Assembly: GCA_001179505.1 (NCBI GenBank)
Contig: CDMY01000889.1
Location: 1-12,872 of the forward strand
Length of the DNA: 12,872 nucleotides
Reading direction: 5' to 3'
From: Vitrella brassicaformis CCMP3155
Taxonomy: Eukaryota > Protista > Chromerida
Shown one piece after another: positions 1 through 12,872 of the stretch; the stretch's first letter is position 1; the number at the start of each line of letters is the position of its first letter. The notes beneath the pieces are model-generated. The model had not been told where the DNA came from and ran no database searches. It saw only the letters and a list, made by a program, of their open reading frames with translations. The position numbers and the translations under genes were made by a program.

Positions 1-270
1 TTCGTCGCCCACTCGGAAGTGCGGATGGTGCTGAGTGGCGCCGGTGACGTCTGGTCCGAGTCGCGTGACGATGCCCGAGCAGTCGCTGCCCGGCGGCCCC
101 GGGTCGCCCGGATACAGTCCCATCACATTCAACACGTCGCGGAAATTCAAACCAACCGCACACACACGCAACTCCACCTGACCAGGACCGGGGGAGAGGC
201 GCTGTGCGTGGCTCAAAGGACGGACCATCAAGTTGGACAGGGCCCCCCGATCAGCCATGTGCAGCTCGAC
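1..270 (-). other. Enoylreductase, N-terminal part, module C
   Basis: VELHMADRGALSNL...GPGQVELRVCAVGLNFRDVLNVMGLYPGDPGPPGSDCSG. Confidence 0.92.
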
Positions 271-2185
271 CGAGCCCTCGGCGACATGCCGACCACGAAC
301 CAGACGGCGCACATACGGATGGCCTCGTATAGCAATCTCGTTCTCGACAAGAGAGTCGACGTCCGGGGCCTTGAAGGTGGTGACAGTCTTGGACAGAGAT
401 TGCAAAAGCGGCACTCCGGACACCCCAGCGACACCGTCACTGTCGAGTTCCAACGATCGGATGTCGACTGCATCACCGACCTCCAGGCGAGCAGCGCGGG
501 CCATGCCCCACACACCAGCATGCACTGGATCGCAGGGCAAGCGCTCATCAATCGAGAGCACCTGTTGCGTGCCGCGGCTGAGGACCCACAGTGTTGGAGC
601 CGTCGTCGATCCCGAAGCGGAACTGACCCTCACCATCGACCTGATCACTTGTGTCAGGGCTTCGAGAACATCCACAGCGTCCTGGGCCGCATCACTCGAC
701 TCCGTGAAGAACACGTCGGTGAATGACTCGCTATCCAGCGCTTTATCCACGCCTTCGACCGTCGATGCGCGGACTGTCAGTGAGCTCGCGGCGGCCTCGA
801 CGCCGCCCACTTGATTTAGTATGTCGTCAGCAGACTGTCCACCGACGAGAAGCCAGCGACCGACGCACTCCTGGGTGGCCTTACGCTGCGCGGCGACCTG
901 CATCCACTCTGTGTTCCACATGGCTGTAGAGAGGTCGACTTGAGGGGTCAGACCACTCAGGTTGGCCTCCATGAAGCGGAACTCGTCGAAGGCGGCGAGG
1001 AGCTTGCCCTCGGCCGAGAAGAGACGGATGTCGGCCATGATCTTGGTCCTCGTGGACTTGCTCGGGTGGATCATGACGTGGGACCAGATGCTGCTGTCGT
1101 GAGGGATGGGCCGAATCTGCACGCGGCCTATGGCCACAGGCACCACAGCCCGCACGTTCGCAGTGGCTTCGGAAGAGGAGACGGCGGCACAGACGCAATG
1201 GAGTGCACCATCAACGACACGAGGGTCCATGCTCAAGAATCGGGTGATCGACTTCTTGGATGGTGGGCTGATGAGACCGAGGGCCTCATTGTCTCCCTGC
1301 CACACCGCCGACACAGTCCTGAATGTCTCGCCGTAGTTGAGCCCCACCCTGTCGAGGATCTCGTACAGCTGGGGGACCGACAGCTTCTTGTTGCAGCCTG
1401 CCTTGGCCTTCTGCAGCTGGTCCTCGGCTGCCAGCGGGTCGACTGATGGAGCGGTGTCCTTGGCGAGCTCCGCCCTCACATGACGCACCGACGGAGCGAG
1501 TCCTCTGTCCTCGCTCACCTCACGGCTGCCCAGCGTCACCGTGCCGTCCTTCGTCACGGAGCACTCCAATCTGAGAGCAGTCCTGAAGTCATAATGCTGG
1601 TCCCAAGCTGCCTCGACCGTCATGGGTCTCTCGAACTCGACGTCCTCAAGGACGACAGATCCGTCGTGGCCGGTGCGGTGGAGCCACTCCTCTGCCTGCA
1701 GCTCCCGAATGGCCGACACGGCCACCTCAATGAAGCCCGCGGCCGGCATGGTGCTCTGCCCAGCGACACAGTGGTCCTTGTAGAGTGCCAAGCCTTCACG
1801 GGGCATGGCCGTCAGGTAGACCATCTTGTTGTCACTAGTGGTGTCACTCGCCATGAGCCGCTTGGCTAGCAGAGGATGACGCAGCTCAGGCCACGGGAGC
1901 GACTGTCGCCGGCCTCGCCCCTGGCGGTCTCCTTGCTGGGCCATCAGGGCTTTCTCTCGACAGCCAGTGACTGTCTCAATTGCCTTGGCGAGGCTTTGCC
2001 GCTCGTCAGTAGGTGACCGCAGCGCCGCAACCATCGTTGGCTGACCTCCTGAGCTGTTGTCCTTCTTGGCGTCGATCCGCTGCGCCAGGCTGGTGAGGAC
2101 AGGCGCCGGGCCGACTTCAAGGAACACCTCGTAGTCGTCCTGGAGAGCCGACACCATGGCGTCGCTAAAGCGAACAGGCTTCAGT
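1..2185 (-). CDS. Exon (runs off the window): AT C-terminus, DH, structural KR and ER N-terminus (module C); absent from the ORF track because it has no stop in the window
   Basis: Manual translation found no stop from 2184 to 1. Motifs: LKPVRFSDAM, FLEVGP, RHPLLAK, KDHCVAGQSTMP, VGLNYGETF, DPRVVDGALH, HAGVWGMARAARLE, LHMADRGALSNL, GLNFRDVLNVMGLYPGDPG. Confidence 0.92.
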
Positions 2186-5100
2186 CTGGACACAGGAGAG
2201 AAAACAAAGAGGACAGTCAGTGTGGTTCTCTGATCGATAGCTGCAATGGAATTAGTCAGCTTGCCTTACATGTGGTCAGCCCAGTATTCTGGCGACAGCA
2301 GCCCGTCGGTGATCTCCTGGCCAGTCACCGTCGAGATGAATCGGACCTCGTCTCTTGGAAGCGAGAAGGTGACGGCCTCGCACGTCTTGCGGAACTGCGT
2401 GGCGACCTCCTTCATCATGGGTGAGTGGAAGGCGTGCGACACGGTCAGGAAGCGGTAGCTCCCCGCCTTCATCTTGTCCAGTGCCTTCTGCACGAGGTCA
2501 TGCCGTCCCGAAATGACCACACTCTGGGGGCCGTTGATGGCGCCGATGGCCATCATGTCGTCGCCCTCCTCAGAGATGATCTCATGCAGCGTCGGTTCCA
2601 TCTCTTCTGCGCTCTTCCTCAGGGCCACCATCACGCCGTCCTGCTCTGGGAGCTCCGCCATGAGTCTGGCCCGCTCGGCCACCAGGAAGATGCCGTCCTC
2701 CAGGCTCATGACGCCGGCCACGACGGCCGCCACATACTCGCCCAGACTGTGACCGATGACAGCGTCAGGAGTGACGCCCTTGGACTTGAGCAGCTCAGAC
2801 AGTGCGTACTCGACGGCAAACAGGGACGGCTGAAGGTATCTTGTGTCCGATGCAGGTGGGTCGGAGGGCGGGCTCTCGTAGAGGAACTGCAGCAGCGACA
2901 TGCCGCACTGCCTCTCTAGGATCTCATGGCAGCTGTCGAGGGCCACCTTGAACGCCGGCTCAGACTCGTAGAGCTGCTCGCACATCTTGAGGCGCTGAGA
3001 GCCCTGGCCAGTGAAAAGGAACACGGTGCGCGATGCAGCAGCACCACTTGGACCGTCCGCAGGAGGCTGGATGTCCTCATCCGAAGCCATTGGAGGTGGC
3101 TCTGTCGGATCCTCACGCTGGACCGTGAGAGACCTCGTGTCATGCTTGTGTTCTCGTGAAAGGACGACGTGTGCGTTGGTGCCGCCGAAGCCGAATGAGC
3201 TGACGCCAGCGCAGAGCCTGCCACCCTTGGCGCCTGCCGCCACTCTGGGCAGCCGGACCGCATCGACGGGCAGCACCACGGGGAAATCATCCACCTCGAT
3301 GTGCGGATTCAAGCCACTCAAGTGCAGGTTAGCCGGAGCTGTCTGCTGCACGAGGACGAGGACCAGCTTGATGAAGCCAGCAATGCCGGCCGATCCCTCC
3401 ATGTGCCCCATGTTGCTCTTGAGGGCTCCAAGGACCAGCGGGTTCTCTCGCCTCCTGCCGGCCTCAAAGACAGACCGCAGGGCACCGATTTCGATCGGGT
3501 CGCCGAGGCTGGTGGCCGTGCCATGGGTCTCGATGTAGGACACGTCGGCAGCACGCACACCCGCATCCTTGAGCGCCTGTGCGATGACTTCCCTCTGCGA
3601 GGGGCCGTTGGGAGCAGTGAGGCTCGCAGATTTGCCGTCCTGGTTGACAGCAATCCCTCGAATCGTCGCCCACACTCCGTTGGGCCCACTCCGCCCCCCA
3701 CCGGCCCTGCGCAGGACGACAGCTCCGCTCCCTTCCGCGCGCCCATAGCCGTTGGCTTTCTCATCGAAGGTCCGGCAGGTCCCCTCCGGTGACAGCATAC
3801 GCGCCTTGCTGAAGGCGACGTAGTTGCCGGGTGCGATCATGAGGTGGACTCCGCCGACGAGGGCCGTGTCGCATCCGCCCTGCCTCAGGGACCTCACCGC
3901 CATGTCGCACGCGACGAGCGAGGACGAACAGGCCGTGTCGACGCAGAGACTGGGACCCTTAAGGCCCATCGCGTACGAGAGCCGGTTGGATATGATGGAC
4001 GAAGCGCTACTGGTGCCCATGAAGGCGCTCACGTCGCTGACCTGGTTCCCATAAACAATGGCGTAGATGGCCAAGTTGTTCAGAATGGACCAGTCGTGGG
4101 TGCACGCCCCGATGAAGACACCGGTAGAGCTGCCCGACAGCGCTTCCTTGGTCATGCCGGCGTCAGCGAACGCGCCGTAGGCCACCTCGAGGATGAGTCG
4201 CTGCTGCGGGTCCATGCTGGTGGCTTCGACTGGCGAGATGTTGAACAGTGAGGCATCGAACATGTCTACGTCGTCGATGAAGGCGCCCTTGGTCGTGTAG
4301 CAGAGGCAGCGGGGGTCGTCGGGGTCCGTGACTGCACACAGCCTCTCCTTGTCCCATCGCATGTTGGGCATGTCGTCGATGGCATTGCCATGGCTGAGCA
4401 GGAAGTCCCACAGTGCCTGTGGACTGTAGCACTCTCCGGGGAAGTGACACGCCATGCCGACGATGGCAATGTTCTGGCTCCCGCCGCTCACCCCACCACC
4501 CGCCTTTGCATCCACCCCCACAAGTGCGGCCCCACCGTCCTGCCTACTGCCCGCCTCCATCATGGTCTCCGTGACGATGTGGTCGACCACTGCGCCCAGT
4601 GTTGGCGCATCGAAGAGGAGTGTGGCCGACAGGCGCATATCCAGCCTCCTTGACAGCTCGTTCCTGAACTCCACGGCCCCGAGCGAGTCGACGCCCAGCT
4701 CCTGCAGAGGCAGGTCGAAGTCCAGTTTGTCCTCGGCCATGCCCATCGTCATCTTGGCCGTCTCCACGACGACCTCTCGCACACGCTCTCTCCTCTTCTC
4801 AACCGACATGCCCGCCAGCTCCTTGTCCAGACCTCCCTCTCCGCGAGACCGTGTGTCCGTGCCGGCCGCGAGACGCGCAAACAACGCGGGAGGCGTCACG
4901 AACTGTCGGATGAACCGCCTGAGCGCCAGCGGCTGCACGGCCACGACTGGGAGTGGGTTGGAGGGCCGAATGAGGGAGTCCAGGACGCGGAGGCCCAGGT
5001 CGTTGGAGATGCTGTAGATGCCCATTCTAGTCAGCTGGGTCAGGTTCGCCTGTTGCGCCGCCATCCCCTGTTCCTTCCAGCCGCCCCACTGGACGCTGAG

Positions 5101-8100
5101 AGCGGGCAAGCCGTGCTTGCGGCGCCACTGGGCTAAGGCATCCAAACATGCGTTGGCTGCCGAGTAGTTGGTCTGTCCCCTGTTGCCCAATACACCGGTG
5201 ATCGACGAGAAGAGGACGAAGTTCTTCACAGATGTCCTCGCGAGCCTCGCGTGAAGGTTCCAGGCTCCCCACACCTGAAAGGAGAGACATACAAACAGGT
5301 CCGGCACTGATCGACAAAATGCGTCATGTTGCTCCCTCGTTCATTCACTCACTCACTCACTGACCTTCGGGCCGAAGACTCTCGTAATGGAGCTGCGCGT
5401 TTGTTCTGCAAGAGGTGCGTCCGCAAGGACCCCTGCAGCGTGCCACAATCCCCCAAGACACGCACCACTCGACGGCGAATTGTCCAAGCCCAAGTCGAAG
5501 TCAGTCTCGGGAACGATCCCTGACAGAAGCTCGTCCACGTGTTCCATGTTGCTGACGTCTGCCTTCTTGATTGTGACGTTGGCGGCCGATTGCGTGAGCC
5601 ACTGCCAGTGTCTGTAGAGCGGGTTGGGCTCTCCGGTCTTGGTGTCGGTCTGGGCCGGCGGGGCGCCTCTGCGCGACACGAGCACTATCGACTTGACGCC
5701 CTCACTCACCAGCCAACGGGCAACCACCAAACCCAATCCACCCACACCACCTGTTATCACGTGAACATCCGCTGGATTGGCCGGCCCAGCGGTCGATGAA
5801 GGGGACCGAGTGGCGCAATCGACAGCGGACGACCAGGAGATGACCACCTTGCCGATGTGCTTGGCCTTCTGCATGAAGCGGAATGCCGCGATGGCGTCGC
5901 CCATGGTGCGGTCGCTCGATGTGTCAAGGTCCTCGGCAGAAGGGGCAGCGTCGACATCGAATTGACAAATCGGTAAGGGCTGCAGCACTCCGGTATCTGC
6001 GAGCTTCGTCAGGTCGGCTAGCCGCTGTCCAAACCAGGCAGGGTCGGCCTCAATCATCTCGTCCAGTGCGATCGGGTGGTACGCAGCCTGCGGCCGTACA
6101 GCGGCCATCTGCTCCCTCGTCCAGATGCCCCGTTTGCCGATCTCAAGGAAGCGACCGCCCACGTGCTTCATCAGGCTCACCGACTCGTCAATGAACTCAC
6201 CAGACAGACAGTTGAGGACGACGTCGAGGCCGGCATCGCCATCGGTCGGCAATGCACCGCCGCCCTCTTGGGGGACGCCGAGGAAGGCCCTCATGTCGGT
6301 CTTGAAGCGGCTGACGTCTCGCGTGCTCGTCACGTACTCGACGCCCAGCGACCGCAGGTACTGCTGCTTCTCGGCGCTCCCAGCCGTCGCATACACCGAC
6401 GCACCCACACGACGGCAGTACTGAATCGCCGCCAAGCCCACCCCGCCACTCGCAGCGTGGATCAGCACACGATTGCTGGCCTGCACCTTGCCCAAGTCCG
6501 TGAAAGCGACCTCCACCGTCCCAAAGACACTCGGCATGGCGGCCGCTTGCTCAAAAGTGAATTTTGTCGGCTTCACAGCCATGGTGTGCACCGATGTGGT
6601 CACGTAGGTCCTCAGGCAGCCGGCCGCTATGCCGTATACGTCATCTCCAAGCTTCAAGTGGTTGATCTCTGGTCCGAGTCGCGTGACGATGCCCGAGCAG
6701 TCGCTGCCCGGCGGCCCCGGGTCGCCCGGATACAGTCCCATCACATTCAACACGTCGCGGAAATTCAAACCGACCGCACGGACACGCAGCTCCACCTGAC
6801 CAGGACCGGGGGCGATCCTCTCTGCCTCGTCAAGTTGGCGCAGGGATAGGTTGGACATGGCGCCCCTCTCCGCCATGTGCAGCTCCATCGGCCCCTTGAC
6901 TGCGATGCTGCTGTCCTTGAGGCGCGGTGCGTAGAGCTTCTCGGCACGAGTCGCATACGCCATTTCGACCTCCTGCACCTTGCCCGCACCGGCTTGGACA
7001 ATGCCGAGCAGGTTTGGAAGCCCACCGCTGGATGAATCGGCATCCTCCGAGTCGTGCTCGATGTCCAGCGACGCGAGTGTGATGCCGGCAGGCATCTCGA
7101 GCCGGGCAGAGCGCAGGAAACCCCATATGCCGGCCATGTGGGCCCGGCAGACCTCGAACAGCGGTGGTGCATCCTCCTCTGACGAGTGGATGTGGAAGAT
7201 GTCGCGGGTGACGACAAGAAAGGTGAATGCTGGGGGCTTGCGGCTGGTGCCGTCTCGATGAAGGACCACATTCCTCAGCGCCTTGCACAGAGTCAACAGC
7301 TCGTCGAGGGCATCCTCAGCAGAGGCGTAGTCGTCGCCCACCCAGTACGTGACCAGGGCCCACTCCTCGCTTCGGAGCATTTTCTCGATGTCCTTGACCG
7401 TGAGGCTCACAAGCTGATCCCTGCTCACTGTCCGTCCCGGTGTGTTTGCTGTGACCAGACGGGCAGGCGACGGCAGGCGAAGGTGCAGGCAGGAGGGCAG
7501 CGATGAGGCGGGACTTGACGCACTGCGTGGCGATGACTCCGACTCTTCGACTGACAGTGTGGGGCTTTCGGGAGCCTCCAAGGCCGAGTCCCCCACCGGC
7601 TTGTCATAGTCGACCTCCTCCCACTCCACACTCCACAGGAGGTCGGCGTACGAGGGTCTCTCAGCTGCCTTGGGCTGGAAGGGCCGTAGCTGCAGCCGCT
7701 CGATCCGCCCCACCACCCTGCCCGTTGCTGCCGCATAGATGTCGATGTCGACCACCACACCAGACGCTTTGCTTTCCTTCAGCACGGCATGGGAGAAGAG
7801 CGTCTCATCCGCCTTGCACGGCTCCAGACAGACCAACTCCACACCGGCAGGTACCAGGAGTGTGTGCTGATGACTGCGGACCAGACAGCCGGCCGACTGG
7901 AAGGCCCCGTCCAAGAGTGCGGGATGCATATTGCATGCAGCATCCAGTGGACCGATGTGGTGGTCCAGCCGCACCTCGCCCAGGCACTCGGAGGACGAGC
8001 TGTCGACCCACAACTTCCTCACCGTCCGATACTCGGGACCATACTCCAGCCCGCCAGTGCGCATCTTCGAGTACACAGTGTCCACGGCCAGGGGCTGCTT

Positions 8101-11100
8101 TATCCTCGCCTGCAGATCAGCCAAGGTGCTCGTCCCTCGTCCGCCATCCGGTGCATCGTCGCTGTCGTCGTCATCCGACGAAGTGAAGTCGTAGACATTG
8201 GCCGTGACGTGGATGATCTGGCCTTCACTATCAGCCTCTTGCTCCGCGTCTTCGGGCACGGTTGCCGCCTGCACTTTGGGGTTCGGCCCATCGCCCACTG
8301 CAAGCCTCAGCACCTTGCCTGCGTCACGCGAGAACACCAGCGGCAGTTGGAACGACACGTTGGTGATGATGGGGGTGTCCCGCGGCTTGTTGAAGGCCTT
8401 GCGAGCACCAGCAATACAGAGCTCAATCCACGCAGCAGCCGGGAAGACCACCTCGGCCTTGACGACGTGATCCTTGAAGAGACTCAGAAAGTCGCTGCCG
8501 ATGAAGCGACGGTACCGTCCCCTGAGGCCCCGCCGCTGTTGCGCCGACTCGATGTCAGGACCCAGGAATGGATGGACGGTCTCCTGCCAGTGGAACGCAC
8601 GACGATTCGGCACCCAAGGGCCACTCACGGCTGTCGCCTCGTCGACACGTGCACCCCTCGCAGCCCTGCTCGACTCGCTGGTGTCCTGTTTGTGTTCGCA
8701 CGAGAAGATGACGTGTGCGTTGGTGCCGCCGAAGCCGAATGAGCTGACGCCAGCGCAGAGCCTGCCGCCCTTGGCGCCTGCCGCCACTCTGGGCAGCCGG
8801 ACCGCATCGACGGGCAGCACCACGGGGAAATCATCCACCTCGATGTGCGGATTCAAGCCACTCAAGTGCAGGCTCGGTGGCACTACCCCACGCTGGAGGG
8901 CGAGGACCAGCTTGATGAGGCCTGCCACGCCAGATGCACCCTCCAGATGGCCAATGTTGGTCTTGAGGGCGCCTATGACCAGTGGGTGGGGTCGCCTCCT
9001 CCCCTTGCTGAACACACTGCGGACTGCACCCACTTCGAGAGGGTCACCTGTCCACCCAGGCAAAGCAGACAAACACGTGAGATGCAGAGGGCGCAAGAGT
9101 GCATTCACGTGAGGGATTGCTTACCTAGGGCGGTGCCCGTTCCGTGGCTCTCGATGTAGTCAATGTCGTTGGGTTTGAGAGCCGCATCGACTAACGCAGC
9201 GGCGATGCAGTCACGCTGGGCGGGGCCGTTGGGCGCGGGGAGGGTGGCTGTTCGGCCGTCGGAGTTGACCGCTGTACCACACACGAAGCCGTGAATCCGC
9301 TCAGCAGGACCCGACGATGAGTTTGCCGGTTTAAGGATGAAGGCAACGCATCCCTCTCCTCGACCGAAGCCGTCAGCTTGTGCGCTGAATGTCTTGCAGC
9401 GTCCTCCTCGGCTGAGCATTCTGGCCTTGGCAAAGATGACATAGTTCTGTGGGGAAAGCAGCAGCTGCACGCCGCCAAGGACGGCGACATCGACGGTGCC
9501 GTCCCTCAGGGCGTTGACGGCTGCGTCGCTTGCCACCAATGCGGAAGAGCATGCTGTGTCGATGGTCATGCTAGGCCCGCGGAGGGCGAAGGCAAACGAG
9601 ATGCGGTTGGAGATGATGGATGCCGCTGAGCCGGTGCCGTGGAAGGCGGTCATGTCGCGCCTCTTGCTGATGTTGATGTAGTTCCAGTCGTTGCCGCAGC
9701 ACCCAGAATACACACCCGTGCGCGTGCCGCGCACGCTCTCCATGGTCATGCTGGAGTCGTGAAGCGCCTCGAGGACCACCTCCAGCAGAACCCTCTGCTG
9801 CGGATCCACCGCGGCAGCCTCAAAGGGAGTGATGTTGAAAGCAGTGTGGTCGAACATCTCCACTCCATCGATGAAGGCTCCATGCCTCGAGTACGTCGTC
9901 CATCCTGAGGCATTCTCGTCGGCACGATAGAACTCGTCATGGTCCCACCTGTCTGGCGGCACCTCCGTCACGCAGTCTTTGCCAGACATCATCATCTTCC
10001 ACAGCGCCTGAGGACTGTCACTGCCGCCTGGCAGACGACACGCCATGCCTGTCACGGCAGCCCGCCGGTCTCGGGGGCCGACAGCCGCCCTCTGGCTGAT
10101 GTGCGCCCCGATTGTCCATGGAGTCTTCTCGCCCTCAGATGCTGTCTCGGCGACCAGAAAGTCGATCATGGCGCCAAGTGTGGGGTAGTCGAAGAGGGTG
10201 GTGGCGGGCAGCTTGACGCCCAGCCGGCGCGAGAGGGTGTTGCGAAGCTCGACGGCGGACAGGCTGTCGAGGCCCAAGTCCACCAGTGACGTGTTCATGG
10301 CCAGGGCGACGTTGGTTGAGGCCGTCATGTGCTGCACGGTCTCGATTAGCACCTTTGTCACCCATTCCTTCCGCTCTTCGGGGCTGGCAATCTCAGACAT
10401 CGACGTCTGCGTGCCCTCGTCAGTGGCGTGGGGGCGGCCTGCCTTGCCGACGGTATGGACGCCCTCCCGCTTCAGTGGGACTATCCTGGGCTTGCTGCAC
10501 AGTGAGAGGACGTCGTAGTAGCTCCCTCCGATGCGACGCATGAAGCTCCGCTGCAGGGCCTCCCAGCGGATTGGCGACACGCACATGGCAGTGAGACGAT
10601 GCTGCATCAGGACTGCCGAGAGGGCTCCCTCAGCCAAGTCCCGGTCGATTCGTAGGAACCCCTGCTTGGCGAGAACGGCAATGCGACCCGCCTCGCCGCC
10701 CGTCATCTCAGCGAGCTCGTCGCCGTCCGACAAGACGCCAAAGTCGATCGACTGCGCAGGCAGACCTTTGCTCTGGCGGTAGACAATCAGCGACTCGATC
10801 AACGAGCAGGCCGCCCCGGCGCTGACATTCAGGGGGACGCCAAAGGCTGCTGCATGGGAGTTGCAGGCGATGAAGACGTCCAGCTGGTCTTCATCCAGAG
10901 TGCTTTGGTGAAGGTTCCACAAGGCGCCCACATCCTCCGTGACCGCCCGCTGGAAGTGCTGCCTCGTGTGCTCGCGGATCGACACTGACTCGGCTGCTCC
11001 GCCAGCGTGAACCACCCCCTTCAGCGGCGGCAGACGCGCCTTGATCATGCGAAGCAACGTGATGAGGTAGGTGATGTCGTTGACATCGCCCGGCACCGGG

Positions 11101-12872
11101 GTGACCTCTGCGACGGAGTCCCTCAGCCATTCCCACGCGGCCGATTGGTACATCGGGACAGCCTCCGCCGGGACGGTCTCGCCAGGCAGATCGCTGTTGC
11201 CTGGGAGCCGTCCGCCTTCCAGCCGTGAGGGCACCAGAATGTGTCGAGCGCCGTTCTCGACCAGGAGGCGGGCAATCATCAATGCGAGGACGCCCGATCG
11301 GCCGGTGATAAGATAGGTCCCGTCAGGATGAAATGAAGTCGAGGGCGGAGCGGGAAGGATCGTCCCTGGTCCTTCGACAGCTGATGCCGGCACGATCTCG
11401 AATGGGCGGCCGCGTCCACGGGACGACGATTGATGGGTCGTGAATCCACCGTGGCCGAGCACCTGCTTCAGTTCCATCCACGTGGGGAGCCAGAATGTGT
11501 CGCTCAGCGTCTCTCGCAGTAGGCCGTGGAGGGGCCCATCTCCACAGCAGGTGACCACCAAGAGCACACCAGTCGGGGCCAGCAACGAGCGGACATTCTT
11601 GAGAGCGTCGGCGAGGTCGTCCGCCTTGCCATACAAGCCGCAAATGACCGCCAGGTTGAATTGTCCTTGCGCAAAGCAGGTGTCAAGCTCGTCGAGTTTG
11701 ACTGAGACGAAATCCACTTGGACGTCTTCTGGGCAGTGGCTGAGCGTCTGTGACGACGCTGCCTGGTCTCCGCCAAAGACGAGATGAGAGCGCCGTCCCT
11801 CCACAGCATCGACGGTGTCACGGACACACGAAAGCCCATTTGAGTAGTGCAGGACCTTCAACAATCCACCAGACGGGAAGCAGCGAGCGATCGAACGGAT
11901 GCACGACACCAGCTCCGCCCGAGGGCACGTCTCCTTCGACGATTGCCACGCCGCTTCGAAGGCACCGCGCAGCGAGGCTGACTGGACGGGAACCTCACTG
12001 GCGTCTGCTGTGGAGCCAGACTCGATCACTTGCTTCAGGTACAAGACGCTTTCCTGAATAAGCGAAGGGTACGATGACTGTGATTCATCGCTCAGCTCCA
12101 CGGTTGTCGCGTTGGTCTGCTGCAGCATGTCTGTGAGCCTTGTCGACAGGTCGGCTTGAGCCTTCTGCTTCTCGTCATCAGACTGGAGCGTCTCCAAGAT
12201 GTCTTGGACTGCCGATGCAGCAAACCGATCCAGATCGATATGGGTGACGCCGTCCTGGGCAGTCTCAGGCAGCTGAGCACGCTGCATCGCGGCTTCTGTC
12301 TCCTCCACTGCCTTGCGCTGCCACTCACGCTGGCGGCTGGCCGCTGACTGCGACGGACACGCACTCAGGACCACTTTGCCCATGTGTTTGGCTTTCTGCA
12401 GGAACTGGAATGCTTCCACACACTGAGTCTTGATGTCGAAGGCCGTCAGAGGAAGGCCCTCGGGGTGGTGTCTGCTGCCCGTCTGGATGCGGGACAACAG
12501 GGTCTGGAACTTCTTGGGCCTCGTCTCGATCATGGAGTCGATGGCCACCACATGGTAGGTGACGTGTGGGTACTTGGCTGCGACGTCCTCCGCTGTCCAG
12601 ATGCCCCGTTTGCCGAGCTCGATGAAGGTGCCGCCGCTGCTTTGCCGCAGGCCGTCGAGGGAGGCCTTGATGAAGTCGCCAGACAGCGAGTTGAGGACCG
12701 TGTCGACAAAGCCGTGCTCGCCAGTCCACGAGACGAGGGCATCGCGGAACACCTGACGAGCAGCAGCAGGCAACACACAAGGAGAATGACAACCGTCTCA
12801 TACCACACCCTCATGCAATGGACTGACTCACCTTCGGGTCTCTGGAGCTGGCGACGAGCTGGACGCCGAGAG
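1..12872 (-). CDS. Giant multimodular type I PKS/FAS, internal fragment open at both ends; spliced join complement(12832-12872, 9125-12752, 5365-9047, 2270-5274, 1-2185), about 4,180 codons
   Basis: Spliced translation is continuous and restores conserved motifs at every junction: VASSRDPK|VFRDAL (ER), HGTGTALG|DPLE (KS), VFGPK|VWGAWNLH (KR), YWADHI|LKPVRF (AT). Canonical KS (DTACSS, HGT, GH), AT (GHSLG, HAFH), DH, ER, KR and ACP (DSL) motifs are present. Exon lengths 41+3628+3683+3005+2185 plus introns 79+77+90+84 sum to 12872. Confidence 0.96.
50..194. repeat. Direct repeat copy 1 (145 nt, start of ER-C); partner 6668-6812
   Basis: 50-153 is identical to 6668-6771 (104 nt); 141/145 identical overall. 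Confidence 0.95.
970..1878 (-). other. Dehydratase, module C
   Basis: HPLL, canonical HxxxGxxxxP (HCVAGQSTMP, His 1771-1773), GLNYG and DGALH. Confidence 0.92.
2060..3027 (-). other. Acyltransferase, module C, predicted malonyl-CoA specific (split by the intron at 2186-2269)
   Basis: VFLFTGQGSQ, GHSLG (Ser 2746-2748), conserved R in ERA, HAFH (2425-2436; established malonyl signature) and FLEVGP. Confidence 0.94.
2186..2269 (-). other. Spliceosomal intron, 84 nt, phase 2
   Basis: GTAAGG donor, ACTGAC branch-like motif, pyrimidine tract and CAG acceptor. It contains an in-frame TAA; removal yields the AT motif YWADHILKPVRF. Confidence 0.94.
2270..5274 (-). CDS. Exon: KR C-terminus and ACP (module B), KS and most of AT (module C)
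   Basis: ORF 2266..5307 trimmed to its splice sites. Motifs: FSSITGVLGNRGQTNYSAAN, LGVDSL, DTACSS, GQGSQ, GHSLG, HAFH. Confidence 0.94.
3160..4473 (-). other. Ketosynthase, module C
   Basis: DTAC (Cys 3928-3930), HGTAT, NMGH and VSSFGFGGTNAHV. Confidence 0.96.
3166..3328. repeat. Direct repeat copy 1 (163 nt, end of KS-C); partner 8710-8872
   Basis: Base-by-base comparison gives 162/163 identity; the single difference is 3223 a vs 8767 g. Confidence 0.95.
4564..4800 (-). other. Acyl carrier protein, module B
   Basis: LQELGVDSLGAVEFRNEL...LSATLLFDAPT; Ser codon at 4684-4686. Confidence 0.95.
5275..5364 (-). other. Spliceosomal intron, 90 nt, phase 0
   Basis: GTCAGT donor and TCTCTCCTTTCAG acceptor. 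It contains an in-frame TGA; removal yields the KR motif GPKVWGAWNLH. Confidence 0.93.
5341..5364. repeat. Intronic tetranucleotide microsatellite (TCAC)n / (GTGA)n, 6 imperfect units
   Basis: TCAT TCAC TCAC TCAC TCAC TGAC read directly from the sequence. Confidence 0.9.
5365..9047 (-). CDS. Exon: KS C-terminus, DH, structural KR, ER and KR N-terminus (module B)
   Basis: ORF 5353..9108 trimmed to its splice sites. Motifs: GALKTNIGHLEG, VSSFGFGGTNAHV, DHVVKAEVVFP, HPALLDGAFQ, GLNFRDVL, HAASGGVG, VITGGVGGLG. Confidence 0.94.
5839..6888 (-). other. Enoylreductase, module B
   Basis: VRAVGLNFRDVL, LYPG, VLIHAASGGVGLAAIQ (NADPH-binding motif), HIGKVVI. Confidence 0.95.
6668..6812. repeat. Direct repeat copy 2 (145 nt, start of ER-B); partner 50-194
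   Basis: Same comparison, offset 6618 nt. Confidence 0.95.
7678..8574 (-). other. Dehydratase, module B
   Basis: HPFLG, DHVVKAEVVFP (His 8467-8469), GLEYGPEY, HPALLDGAFQ. Confidence 0.92.
8710..8872. repeat. Direct repeat copy 2 (163 nt, end of KS-B); partner 3166-3328
   Basis: Same comparison, offset 5544 nt. Confidence 0.95.
9048..9124 (-). other. Spliceosomal intron, 77 nt, phase 1
   Basis: GTAAGC donor and CAG acceptor. Removal yields the KS motif HGTGTALGDPLE and corrects the frame change between the two ORFs. Confidence 0.95.
9125..12752 (-). CDS. Exon: ER C-terminus, pseudo-MT, inactive KR, ACP (module A) and N-terminal part of the module B KS
   Basis: ORF 9105..12776 trimmed to its splice sites (CAG|GTG at 12753/12752; TAG|GTAAG at 9125/9124). 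Confidence 0.93.
10143..10379 (-). other. Acyl carrier protein, module A
   Basis: LVDLGLDSLSAVELRNTL...LPATTLFDYPT; phosphopantetheine Ser codon at 10263-10265. Confidence 0.95.
10542..11321 (-). other. Ketoreductase domain, predicted inactive (KR0), module A
   Basis: GTYLITGRSGVLA, KGVVHAGG, ALWNLH and GLPAQSIDFG give the KR framework. Catalytic Lys, Tyr and Asn are replaced (see findings). Confidence 0.85.
11436..12242 (-). other. Degenerate C-methyltransferase-like domain (pseudo-MT), module A
   Basis: Resembles PKS cMT pattern: LDRFAA, LKVLHYSNG (motif I position), FNLAVICGLY, DLADALKNVRSLLAPTGVLLV, LKQVLGHGGF. SAM-binding and catalytic residues are altered. Assigned by eye, without an HMM. 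Confidence 0.65.
12753..12831 (-). other. Spliceosomal intron, 79 nt, phase 0
   Basis: GTGAGT donor, pyrimidine/TG-rich tract and CAG acceptor. Removal restores the ER alignment. Confidence 0.88.
12832..12872 (-). CDS. Exon fragment, ER domain of module A (LGVQLVASSRDPK)
   Basis: Translation aligns with module B ER 'LGVEYVTSTRDVS'. It is followed by the donor GTGAGT at 12831. Confidence 0.85.

What the first reader, a model, noticed from the sequence alone, without database searches (positions are those of the whole stretch)
10542..11321. Module A ketoreductase has lost its catalytic residues although it follows an ER
Seen, aligned to the intact KR-B: Rossmann TGGVGGLG becomes TGRSGVLA; catalytic Lys (GPKVWG) becomes Asp (TEDVGA, codon 10932-10934); catalytic Tyr (GQTNYSAAN) becomes Ala (LNVSAGAAC, codon 10818-10820); the following Asn becomes Cys; and the LDD-like motif is absent (HAGGAAES). 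The frame is intact and the downstream ACP and KS look functional. Known: SDR-type KRs require the Lys/Ser/Tyr/Asn set, and redox-inactive KR0 domains can be structural or epimerising. Inference: module A cannot reduce its beta-keto group in cis, so its ER is either unused or fed another way. A pseudo-MT plus KR0 suggests coordinated inactivation, or repurposing as a loading or pass-through module.
Basis: partly seen in the sequence, partly recalled or inferred. Interest (0 to 1): 0.7.

Follow-up and report, generated by a model that had tools for sequence, protein, structure and literature searches.

The report
Dead ketoreductase domain in algal PKS
One ketoreductase domain of a giant polyketide synthase gene of the alga Vitrella brassicaformis has lost three of its four catalytic residues but keeps its fold and is expressed, so it is an ordinary inactive "KR0" domain that decayed after a gene duplication.

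Summary
At window 10542-11321 (minus strand) a KR-type domain has Asp615 for the catalytic Lys, Ala653 for Tyr and Cys657 for Asn; Ser640 is kept. HMMER alignments to solved KRs and MAFFT alignments agree on the register. The codons read the same in DNA contigs from two studies and in spliced RNA contigs.

The window is a whole contig of the 72.7 Mb Vitrella brassicaformis assembly. It carries part of one intron-bearing modular PKS: ER-pseudoMT-KR0-ACP | KS-DH-ER-KR-ACP | KS-AT-DH-ER.

KR-A is the only dead KR among about 34 KR domains scored in this genome. No orthologue turned up among 1.84 billion protein representatives. It has by far the longest branch in the KR tree, yet it matches the KR profile end to end and models confidently as a KR fold.

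The largely collinear paralogue on contig C791 has the same ER-pseudoMT-KR order, an equally degenerate MT and an intact KR. KR decay therefore followed the duplication and was not coordinated with MT decay.

Best reading: a C1-type, purely structural KR0. The module probably leaves its beta-keto group unreduced, with DH and ER idle. Dead KRs after DH or ER occur in other PKSs, so this is a new member of a known kind. The scan had not reported this dead KR on other DNA.

The parts
12832..12872 (-). Last 41 nt of an upstream ER exon (...LGVQLVASSRDPK). The gene runs off the contig here.
   Evidence: Alignment to C791 and translation of the C791 ER.
12753..12831 (-). Intron, 79 nt, GT..AG, about 97% identical to the C791 intron.
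   Evidence: The public gene model P0117 starts right after it.
12360..12752 (-). C-terminal part of the module A enoylreductase (ER-A).
   Evidence: Pfam ADH_zinc_N_2. 76% aa identity to the C791 module-1 ER, and near-identical over the first ~100 residues.
11322..12359 (-). Pseudo-methyltransferase inserted in the ER-to-KR linker. Motif I reads VLHYSNGLSC and the catalytic His position is Tyr.
   Evidence: Pfam Methyltransf_12/23 at E 0.002-0.009. hhalign against PKS C-MTs gives 84.7% probability, E 6.7e-6. Alignment A3.
10542..11321 (-). KR-A, the catalytically dead ketoreductase domain (KR0).
   Evidence: Pfam KR E 7.4e-34 over profile positions 1-179/180. Alignments. AlphaFold2 model pLDDT 83.4. 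Foldseek top hits are PKS and FAS KRs.
11283..11306 (-). Altered glycine motif TGRSGVLA (consensus TGGxGxLG).
10932..10934 (-). Asp615 in place of the catalytic Lys.
10857..10859 (-). Ser640, the retained catalytic Ser.
10818..10820 (-). Ala653 in place of the catalytic Tyr.
10806..10808 (-). Cys657 in place of the catalytic Asn.
10143..10376 (-). ACP of module A, with the GLDSL serine present.
   Evidence: Pfam PP-binding and translation.
8863..10067 (-). KS of module B (Cys/His/His present, no AT follows), interrupted by the intron at 9048-9124.
9048..9124 (-). Intron, 77 nt, GT..AG, spliced out in an RNA contig.
   Evidence: Sequence. Joint in run X4 only. Gene model P0117.
5038..5766 (-). 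KR-B, the intact comparator KR, split by the intron at 5275-5364.

Best explanation
KR-A is a genuine homologue of the catalytic subdomain of PKS ketoreductases that has lost its reductase chemistry. It is a C1-type KR0: neither a reductase nor, most likely, an epimerase. It arose when a FAAL-primed Vitrella PKS of the C791 type was duplicated. In the C791 copy the KR of the ER-pseudoMT-KR module stayed intact. In this copy it evolved several times faster and lost Lys, Tyr and Asn. The domain is kept in frame and folded because it is a structural part of the modifying region and must be translated to reach the ACP and the downstream modules (inferred). As a consequence (also inferred), module A hands a beta-keto intermediate to the AT-less module B, the module's DH and ER have no substrate, and the product differs from the paralogue's by an unreduced keto group.
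For: Shown: the residue replacements hold in a consistent register against solved KRs and 13 other KRs. The domain matches the KR profile end to end. It models confidently as a KR fold (pLDDT 83.4, pTM 0.84), and the best structural matches are PKS and FAS KRs with TMq 0.67-0.76. It is the only KR in the genome survey lacking these residues. It has the lowest Pfam score of the 13 single-exon KRs (122 against 154-211 bits). Its terminal branch is 3.49 against a median of 0.47. It has 31-41 unique changes against 12-21 in the C791 KR (p 8e-5 to 0.13). It keeps only 22 of 38 columns that are at least 90% conserved. The largely collinear paralogue has an intact KR and the same pseudoMT. No orthologue was found among 1.84 billion representatives; the only strong hit is the window's own gene model. 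The gene is transcribed and correctly spliced, with RNA contigs colinear across KR-A. Downstream ACP, KS, DH, ER, KR and AT motifs are intact. There is precedent: 16 of 517 KR domains in retrieved PKSs lack Lys or Tyr/His, including one directly after an ER and three after a DH. Tyr and Ser are implicated in KR epimerisation (PMC5331325).
Against: No biochemical test was done. Several cofactor-binding elements survive (TG..G, SR, DVND, VHAGG), so NADPH binding and some residual or altered role cannot be excluded. The module's KS, AT, DH and the NADPH motif of ER-A lie off the contig, so the state of the rest of the module is unknown. A trans-acting reductase cannot be excluded. I could not inspect 3D coordinates to rule out a substitute Tyr/Lys pair; by sequence, none lies in the active-site helices. 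AlphaFold2 fed an alignment of active KRs is biased towards the KR fold.
Confidence: 0.78

Rival explanations
1. The beta-keto group made by module A is reduced by another reductase, either a free-standing KR or the KR of a neighbouring module. DH and ER of module A would then still be used, and KR-A would be only a scaffold.
For: The visible part of ER-A is kept near-identical to the ER of the paralogue whose module looks fully functional. AT-less modules that need trans partners are common in this genome (PMC7464705).
Against: No candidate trans-KR was identified. Gene conversion alone explains the ER identity. Nothing here links a second KR to this module.
Confidence: 0.1
2. The whole of module A is non-functional or skipped (a pass-through module), and KR decay is one symptom of that.
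For: Both the MT and the KR of the module are degenerate, and KR-A evolves fast.
Against: ACP-A keeps its phosphopantetheine serine and is 51% identical to the paralogue's ACP, like the active domains. The pseudoMT is equally degenerate in the paralogue, whose KR is intact. The module's KS and AT cannot be seen.
Confidence: 0.08
3. KR-A is still catalytic, using a non-canonical residue set or carrying out a different reaction.
For: Ser640 and most cofactor-binding motifs are retained, and the fold is predicted with confidence.
Against: Lys, Tyr and Asn are all replaced by residues that cannot form the SDR proton relay. No other Tyr or Lys lies in helices alpha4 or alpha5 by sequence. The long branch and the loss of 16 of 38 conserved columns look like relaxed constraint.
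Confidence: 0.03
4. It is an artefact: a sequencing or assembly error, or a pseudogene fragment.
For: The contig is short, and both of its ends sit in a collapsed repeat.
Against: The KR-A sequence is identical in DNA contigs of two studies and in RNA contigs. The frame is open for about 4,170 codons with three clean GT..AG introns, one of them seen spliced. The repeat covers only the terminal ~160-390 nt, not KR-A.
Confidence: 0.01

Closest known systems
C1-type (reduction- and epimerisation-inactive) ketoreductase domains of modular PKSs, in the classification reviewed in PMC5331325
   Same: A full-length catalytic-subdomain fold, loss of the catalytic Tyr and other active-site residues, retention inside an otherwise working assembly line, and a predicted beta-keto outcome.
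   Different: The host is eukaryotic (a chromerid alga). The domain sits behind an ER and a pseudo-methyltransferase. Three of four catalytic residues are gone in a combination (R-D-S-A-C) not seen among 517 KR domains sampled.
C2-type KR0 domains (DEBS KR3, PikKR3; PDB 3qp9)
   Same: Redox-inactive KR fold. 3qp9 is among the structural matches (TMq 0.76).
   Different: C2 domains keep Tyr and Ser and epimerise an alpha-methyl centre. KR-A lacks Tyr, and its module has no working MT.
KR of module 1 of the Vitrella PKS on contig C791 (paralogue)
   Same: The same ER-pseudoMT-KR-ACP order and spacing, a largely collinear gene (modules A and B match C791 modules 1 and 2), and shared gene-conversion tracts.
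   Different: The C791 KR keeps TGGFGCLG, Lys, Ser, Tyr and Asn and scores 203 bits against Pfam KR. KR-A scores 122 bits and is only 32% identical to it.
Pseudo-methyltransferase and pseudo-KR of animal fatty acid synthase
   Same: Non-catalytic relics of MT and KR folds kept as architecture in a megasynthase. Human FAS psi/KR structures are among the fold matches.
   Different: In FAS the pseudo-domains precede the ER, and the pseudo-KR is a truncated structural subdomain. Here the relics follow the ER, and KR-A is a full-length catalytic subdomain.

Membership tests
PKS ketoreductase catalytic subdomain (Pfam PF08659) | Significant end-to-end match to the KR profile | tested here: met
   117.7 bits against a cut-off of 22.6, profile positions 1-179/180; 121.9 bits in the genome scan.
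PKS ketoreductase catalytic subdomain (Pfam PF08659) | Rossmann-type KR fold | tested here: met
   AlphaFold2 pLDDT 83.4, pTM 0.84. Foldseek top hits are PKS and FAS KRs at E 1e-14 to 1e-12. This is a prediction, not a solved structure.
Active SDR-type ketoreductase | Catalytic Lys-Ser-Tyr-Asn set | tested here: not met
   The set reads Asp615, Ser640, Ala653, Cys657.
Active SDR-type ketoreductase | NADPH-binding motifs (TGGxGxLG, SRR, DVxD, HAAG) | tested here: inconclusive
   The motifs read TGRSGVLA, SRL, DVND and HAGG. Only Gly3 to Arg and the second Arg are changed. The active KR of 4l4x also ends its glycine motif in Ala. Binding was not measured.
C1-type KR0 | Catalytic Tyr absent, so no reductase and no epimerase chemistry | tested here: met
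   Tyr is replaced by Ala653. Absence of activity is inferred, not assayed (PMC5331325).
C2-type (epimerising) KR0 | Retained Tyr and Ser, with an alpha-branched substrate | tested here: not met
   Tyr is absent. The module's MT is degenerate. The AT specificity of the module is unknown.
Structural KR subdomain (pseudo-KR, KRs) | A truncated Rossmann half lying N-terminal to the ER insertion | tested here: not met
   KR-A lies after the ER and matches the whole catalytic-subdomain profile.

The most novel reading that the evidence does not exclude
The KR-like domain still binds NADPH and has been recruited for something other than ketoreduction. That could be a new chemistry using Asp615/Ser640/Cys657, or a cofactor-sensing or gating role that decides whether DH and ER act. 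In that case the pseudoMT-KR0 pair would be a functional innovation rather than decay.
Probability: 0.04. Interest if true: 0.7.

Novelty: new member of a known kind. Interest (0 to 1): 0.27.

Why it matters
It gives a clean, dated example of how assembly-line synthases diversify in protists. After duplication, one copy keeps a full reductive loop and the other silences it by killing only the KR, which should turn a methylene into a keto group in an unknown Vitrella lipid or polyketide. It also shows a catalytic KR subdomain turning into a pseudo-domain beside an older pseudo-methyltransferase, which recalls the relic domains of animal FAS. For annotation, it warns that domain lists of chromerid and apicomplexan PKSs overstate their reductive capacity. 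None of this overturns current understanding.

Tried and rejected
- dN/dS against orthologues was impossible. The word search and the exhaustive HMMER search found no orthologue, only the window's own gene model. I used a relative-rate test and a tree against paralogues instead.
- The upstream KS, DH and ER NADPH motif of module A could not be inspected. The window is the whole contig, and the adjoining 289 nt of ER is assembled only once, in C791.
- 'Coordinated MT and KR inactivation' was rejected, because the paralogue has the same dead MT beside a live KR.
- An epimerase (C2) role was rejected for lack of Tyr.
- A hidden intron or RNA-level correction in KR-A was rejected. RNA contigs are colinear and identical to the DNA.
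- A sequencing error was rejected for the same reason.
- A structure-based search for a substitute Tyr/Lys pair could not be done at residue level, because the tools return no coordinates. Only sequence and secondary-structure reasoning was possible.
- Searches failed on frame or term slips and were corrected.
KR-B was handled as two exon pieces, and the joined step was left out.

Full report
**What the window is.** The 12,872-nt window is the whole of contig C889 of a 72.7 Mb, 1,064-contig assembly. Earlier notes of this scan name the organism as Vitrella brassicaformis.

The minus strand carries one long gene broken only by short GT..AG introns:
- 12753-12831 (79 nt)
- 9048-9124 (77 nt)
- 5275-5364 (90 nt)
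- 2186-2269 (84 nt)

The public gene model returned by the exhaustive search (P0117, 4,167 aa) uses the same junctions.

Pfam and a blastx of the left end against the C791 gene give this order: [ER C-part]-pseudoMT-KR-ACP | KS-DH-(KRs)-ER-KR-ACP | KS-AT-DH-(KRs)-ER N-part. The gene runs off both ends of the contig.

**The observation.**
- the PKV lysine is Asp615
- the tyrosine is Ala653
- the asparagine four residues on is Cys657
- the catalytic serine is kept (Ser640, the second S of FSS, 13 residues before the Tyr position)

The glycine motif is TGRSGVLA. An active KR of known structure (4l4x) reads TGGSGTLA, so the terminal Ala is tolerated and only Gly to Arg at position 3 is odd. The LDD motif reports stereochemistry, not activity. 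SR, DVND and VHAGG, which contact the cofactor in KRs (established SDR and KR knowledge), are still present. Loss of NADPH binding is therefore not shown.

**Reality of the sequence and expression.** Contigs of runs X1 and X2 (two studies) cover 10177-11017 and 11009-12566 with no mismatch. They keep the 9048-9124 intron, so they are DNA. Run X4 has a contig that skips exactly that intron (CT..AC on the plus strand, which is GT..AG on the gene strand), so X4 holds RNA. Its contigs cover 10457-10671, 10698-11017 and 11145-11834 with no mismatch and no joint. The gene is therefore transcribed and spliced, and KR-A has no hidden intron or edited codon.

**How unusual it is.** A scan of the whole genome with the Pfam KR model gave 45 matches. 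I aligned all of them to a KR profile.
- All 33 other N-terminal parts have (T/S)GG.G..G and the lysine.
- All 22 other C-terminal parts have SS, Tyr or His, and Asn.
- KR-A is the single exception. It also has the lowest score of the 13 single-exon KRs (122 against 154-211 bits).

In a tree of 11 Vitrella and 3 bacterial KRs, its terminal branch is 3.49 changes per site against a median of 0.47. Against its positional paralogue it has 31-41 unique changes to 12-21, depending on the outgroup (p 8e-5 to 0.13). It keeps 22 of 38 columns that are at least 90% conserved, while other Vitrella KRs keep 78-97%.

It still matches the KR profile over positions 1-179 of 180. It models as a Rossmann-type KR with pLDDT 83.4 and pTM 0.84; only a lineage-specific loop after the SR motif has low confidence. 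Its best structural matches are PKS and FAS ketoreductases.

**Origin.** The best relative is a PKS on contig C791, whose order is FAAL-like-ACP | KS-AT-DH-ER-pseudoMT-KR-ACP | KS-DH-ER-KR-ACP | KS-AT-DH.... Over modules A and B the two genes are collinear. Amino-acid identities are:

| Domain (window vs C791) | aa identity |
|---|---|
| ACP, KS, ER, AT | 42-53% |
| DH | 27% |
| KR-A | 32% |
| pseudoMT | below 31%; no match for its core |

Tracts of 92-98% nucleotide identity are scattered through the two genes, and one includes an intron. That is the signature of gene conversion.

The C791 KR is intact (TGGFGCLG, VKV, FSS, GQSNYAAAN). The C791 MT is as degenerate as the window's:
- motif I reads VLIVGHSVG in C791 and VLHYSNGLSC in the window, where true MTs read VLEVGAGTG
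- the catalytic His of NVLHAT is Arg in C791 and Tyr in the window

hhalign confirms that the window's insert is a relic of a PKS C-MT (84.7% probability, E 6.7e-6). The MT was therefore probably already dead in the common ancestor, and the KR died only in this copy. The 'coordinated inactivation' idea is not supported.

The MT relic sits in the short ER-to-KR linker. Another PKS (P0224) has a live MT abutting the KR in the same way, without an ER.

**No orthologue.** The word-index search found only ordinary KRs at about 30% identity covering the KR part. I ran the exhaustive HMMER search because the claim rests on absence of relatives. It gave one strong hit, the window's own gene model. All others reach at best E 2e-45, and those E-values are summed over several KR stretches. 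A dN/dS test is therefore not possible.

**Precedent.** Among 517 KR domains in the 265 PKS proteins retrieved, 16 (3%) lack Lys or Tyr/His. One of these sits directly behind an ER (P0258), and three sit behind a DH (P0193, P0222, P0179). The classification reviewed in PMC5331325 has a class for exactly this, C1: 'reductive- and epimerization-inactive KRs'. The same review reports that Tyr and Ser are implicated in epimerisation by C2-type domains. KR-A lacks Tyr, so an epimerase role is unlikely.

**Mechanism proposed.** What is shown: the domain is a folded KR homologue without the proton relay, it is expressed, and it is flanked by domains with intact motifs. These are ACP-A GLDSL; KS-B Cys/His/His; DH-B His and Asp; ER-B HAASGGVG; KR-B; ACP-B; KS-C; and AT-C GHSLG/HAFH.

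What is inferred:
- KR-A is kept because the modifying region needs it as architecture, and because the frame must be read through to reach the ACP and two further modules.
- Module A delivers a beta-ketoacyl chain to module B.
- DH and ER of module A are idle.
- The product differs from that of the C791 synthase by one keto group.

**Limits.** Both contig ends lie in one ER repeat. Window 1-180 and 12715-12872 are 98-99% identical to C791:101773-101952 and 102242-102399, and the 289 nt between them is assembled only once, in C791. The NADPH motif of ER-A and the module's KS, AT and DH therefore cannot be read. ER-A is probably near-identical to the C791 ER there, but that is an inference from the collapse.

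Module C resembles C791 module 1 more than module 3 (30% against 22%). The gene may therefore be a repeated bimodule, which cannot be resolved here.

The tools return no 3D coordinates, so the 'different register' escape could only be judged by sequence. The only Tyr and Lys residues lie in strand 1, in the variable loop and its neighbouring helices, and at the far end of helix alpha5 or beyond. None is in the active-site segments.

**Verdict.** The core interpretation (a KR0 that cannot reduce in cis) is sound. The added ideas (coordinated inactivation, loading module) are either not supported or untestable here. This is a new member of a known kind, of modest interest mainly as an evolutionary snapshot.

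Noticed in passing
window 1-180 and 12715-12872; C791:101599-102399 (L028): Both contig ends are 98-99% identical to two parts of the ER of C791 module 1. The 289 nt between those parts exists only once in the assembly. This looks like a collapsed repeat that cut the gene at both ends.
   Followed up: partly
window 6203-6441, 5533-5767, 2627-2832, 12484-12872 vs C791:96000-113000: Short tracts of 92-98% nucleotide identity, one including an intron, lie inside paralogous genes that are otherwise only 27-53% identical in protein. This is mosaic gene conversion between PKS paralogues.
   Followed up: partly
window 10963-11052; C499:94967-95056 (L002): A 90-nt piece of KR-A (MIKARLPPLKGVVHAGGAAESVSIREHT) is copied at 96% identity on another contig in a non-PKS context. 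DNA contigs of two runs branch at this spot.
   Followed up: partly
window 11322-12359; L022:6318-8669: The domain order is ER-pseudoMT-KR, with the MT relic inserted in the ER-to-KR linker. It is shared with the C791 paralogue. Other Vitrella PKSs (C685, C236, C858) carry an intact MT after the KR instead.
   Followed up: partly
C685:14460-15038, C236:4650-5228, C858:7829-8407, C127:621-1193: These KRs have His in place of the catalytic Tyr (GQSNH/GQANH/GRSNH). For C685, C236 and C858 an intact MT was seen downstream in the same module. The scan has already reported this elsewhere.
   Followed up: partly
window 10180-10223: A stretch of about 40 nt in ACP-A has roughly ten-fold contig depth in all runs. 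It is a sequence shared by many ACP copies in the genome.
   Followed up: no
window 1-2185: Module C (KS-AT-DH-ER...) resembles C791 module 1 more than the positionally equivalent module 3 (30% against 22% identity), which appears to lack an ER. The gene may be a repeated bimodule.
   Followed up: no
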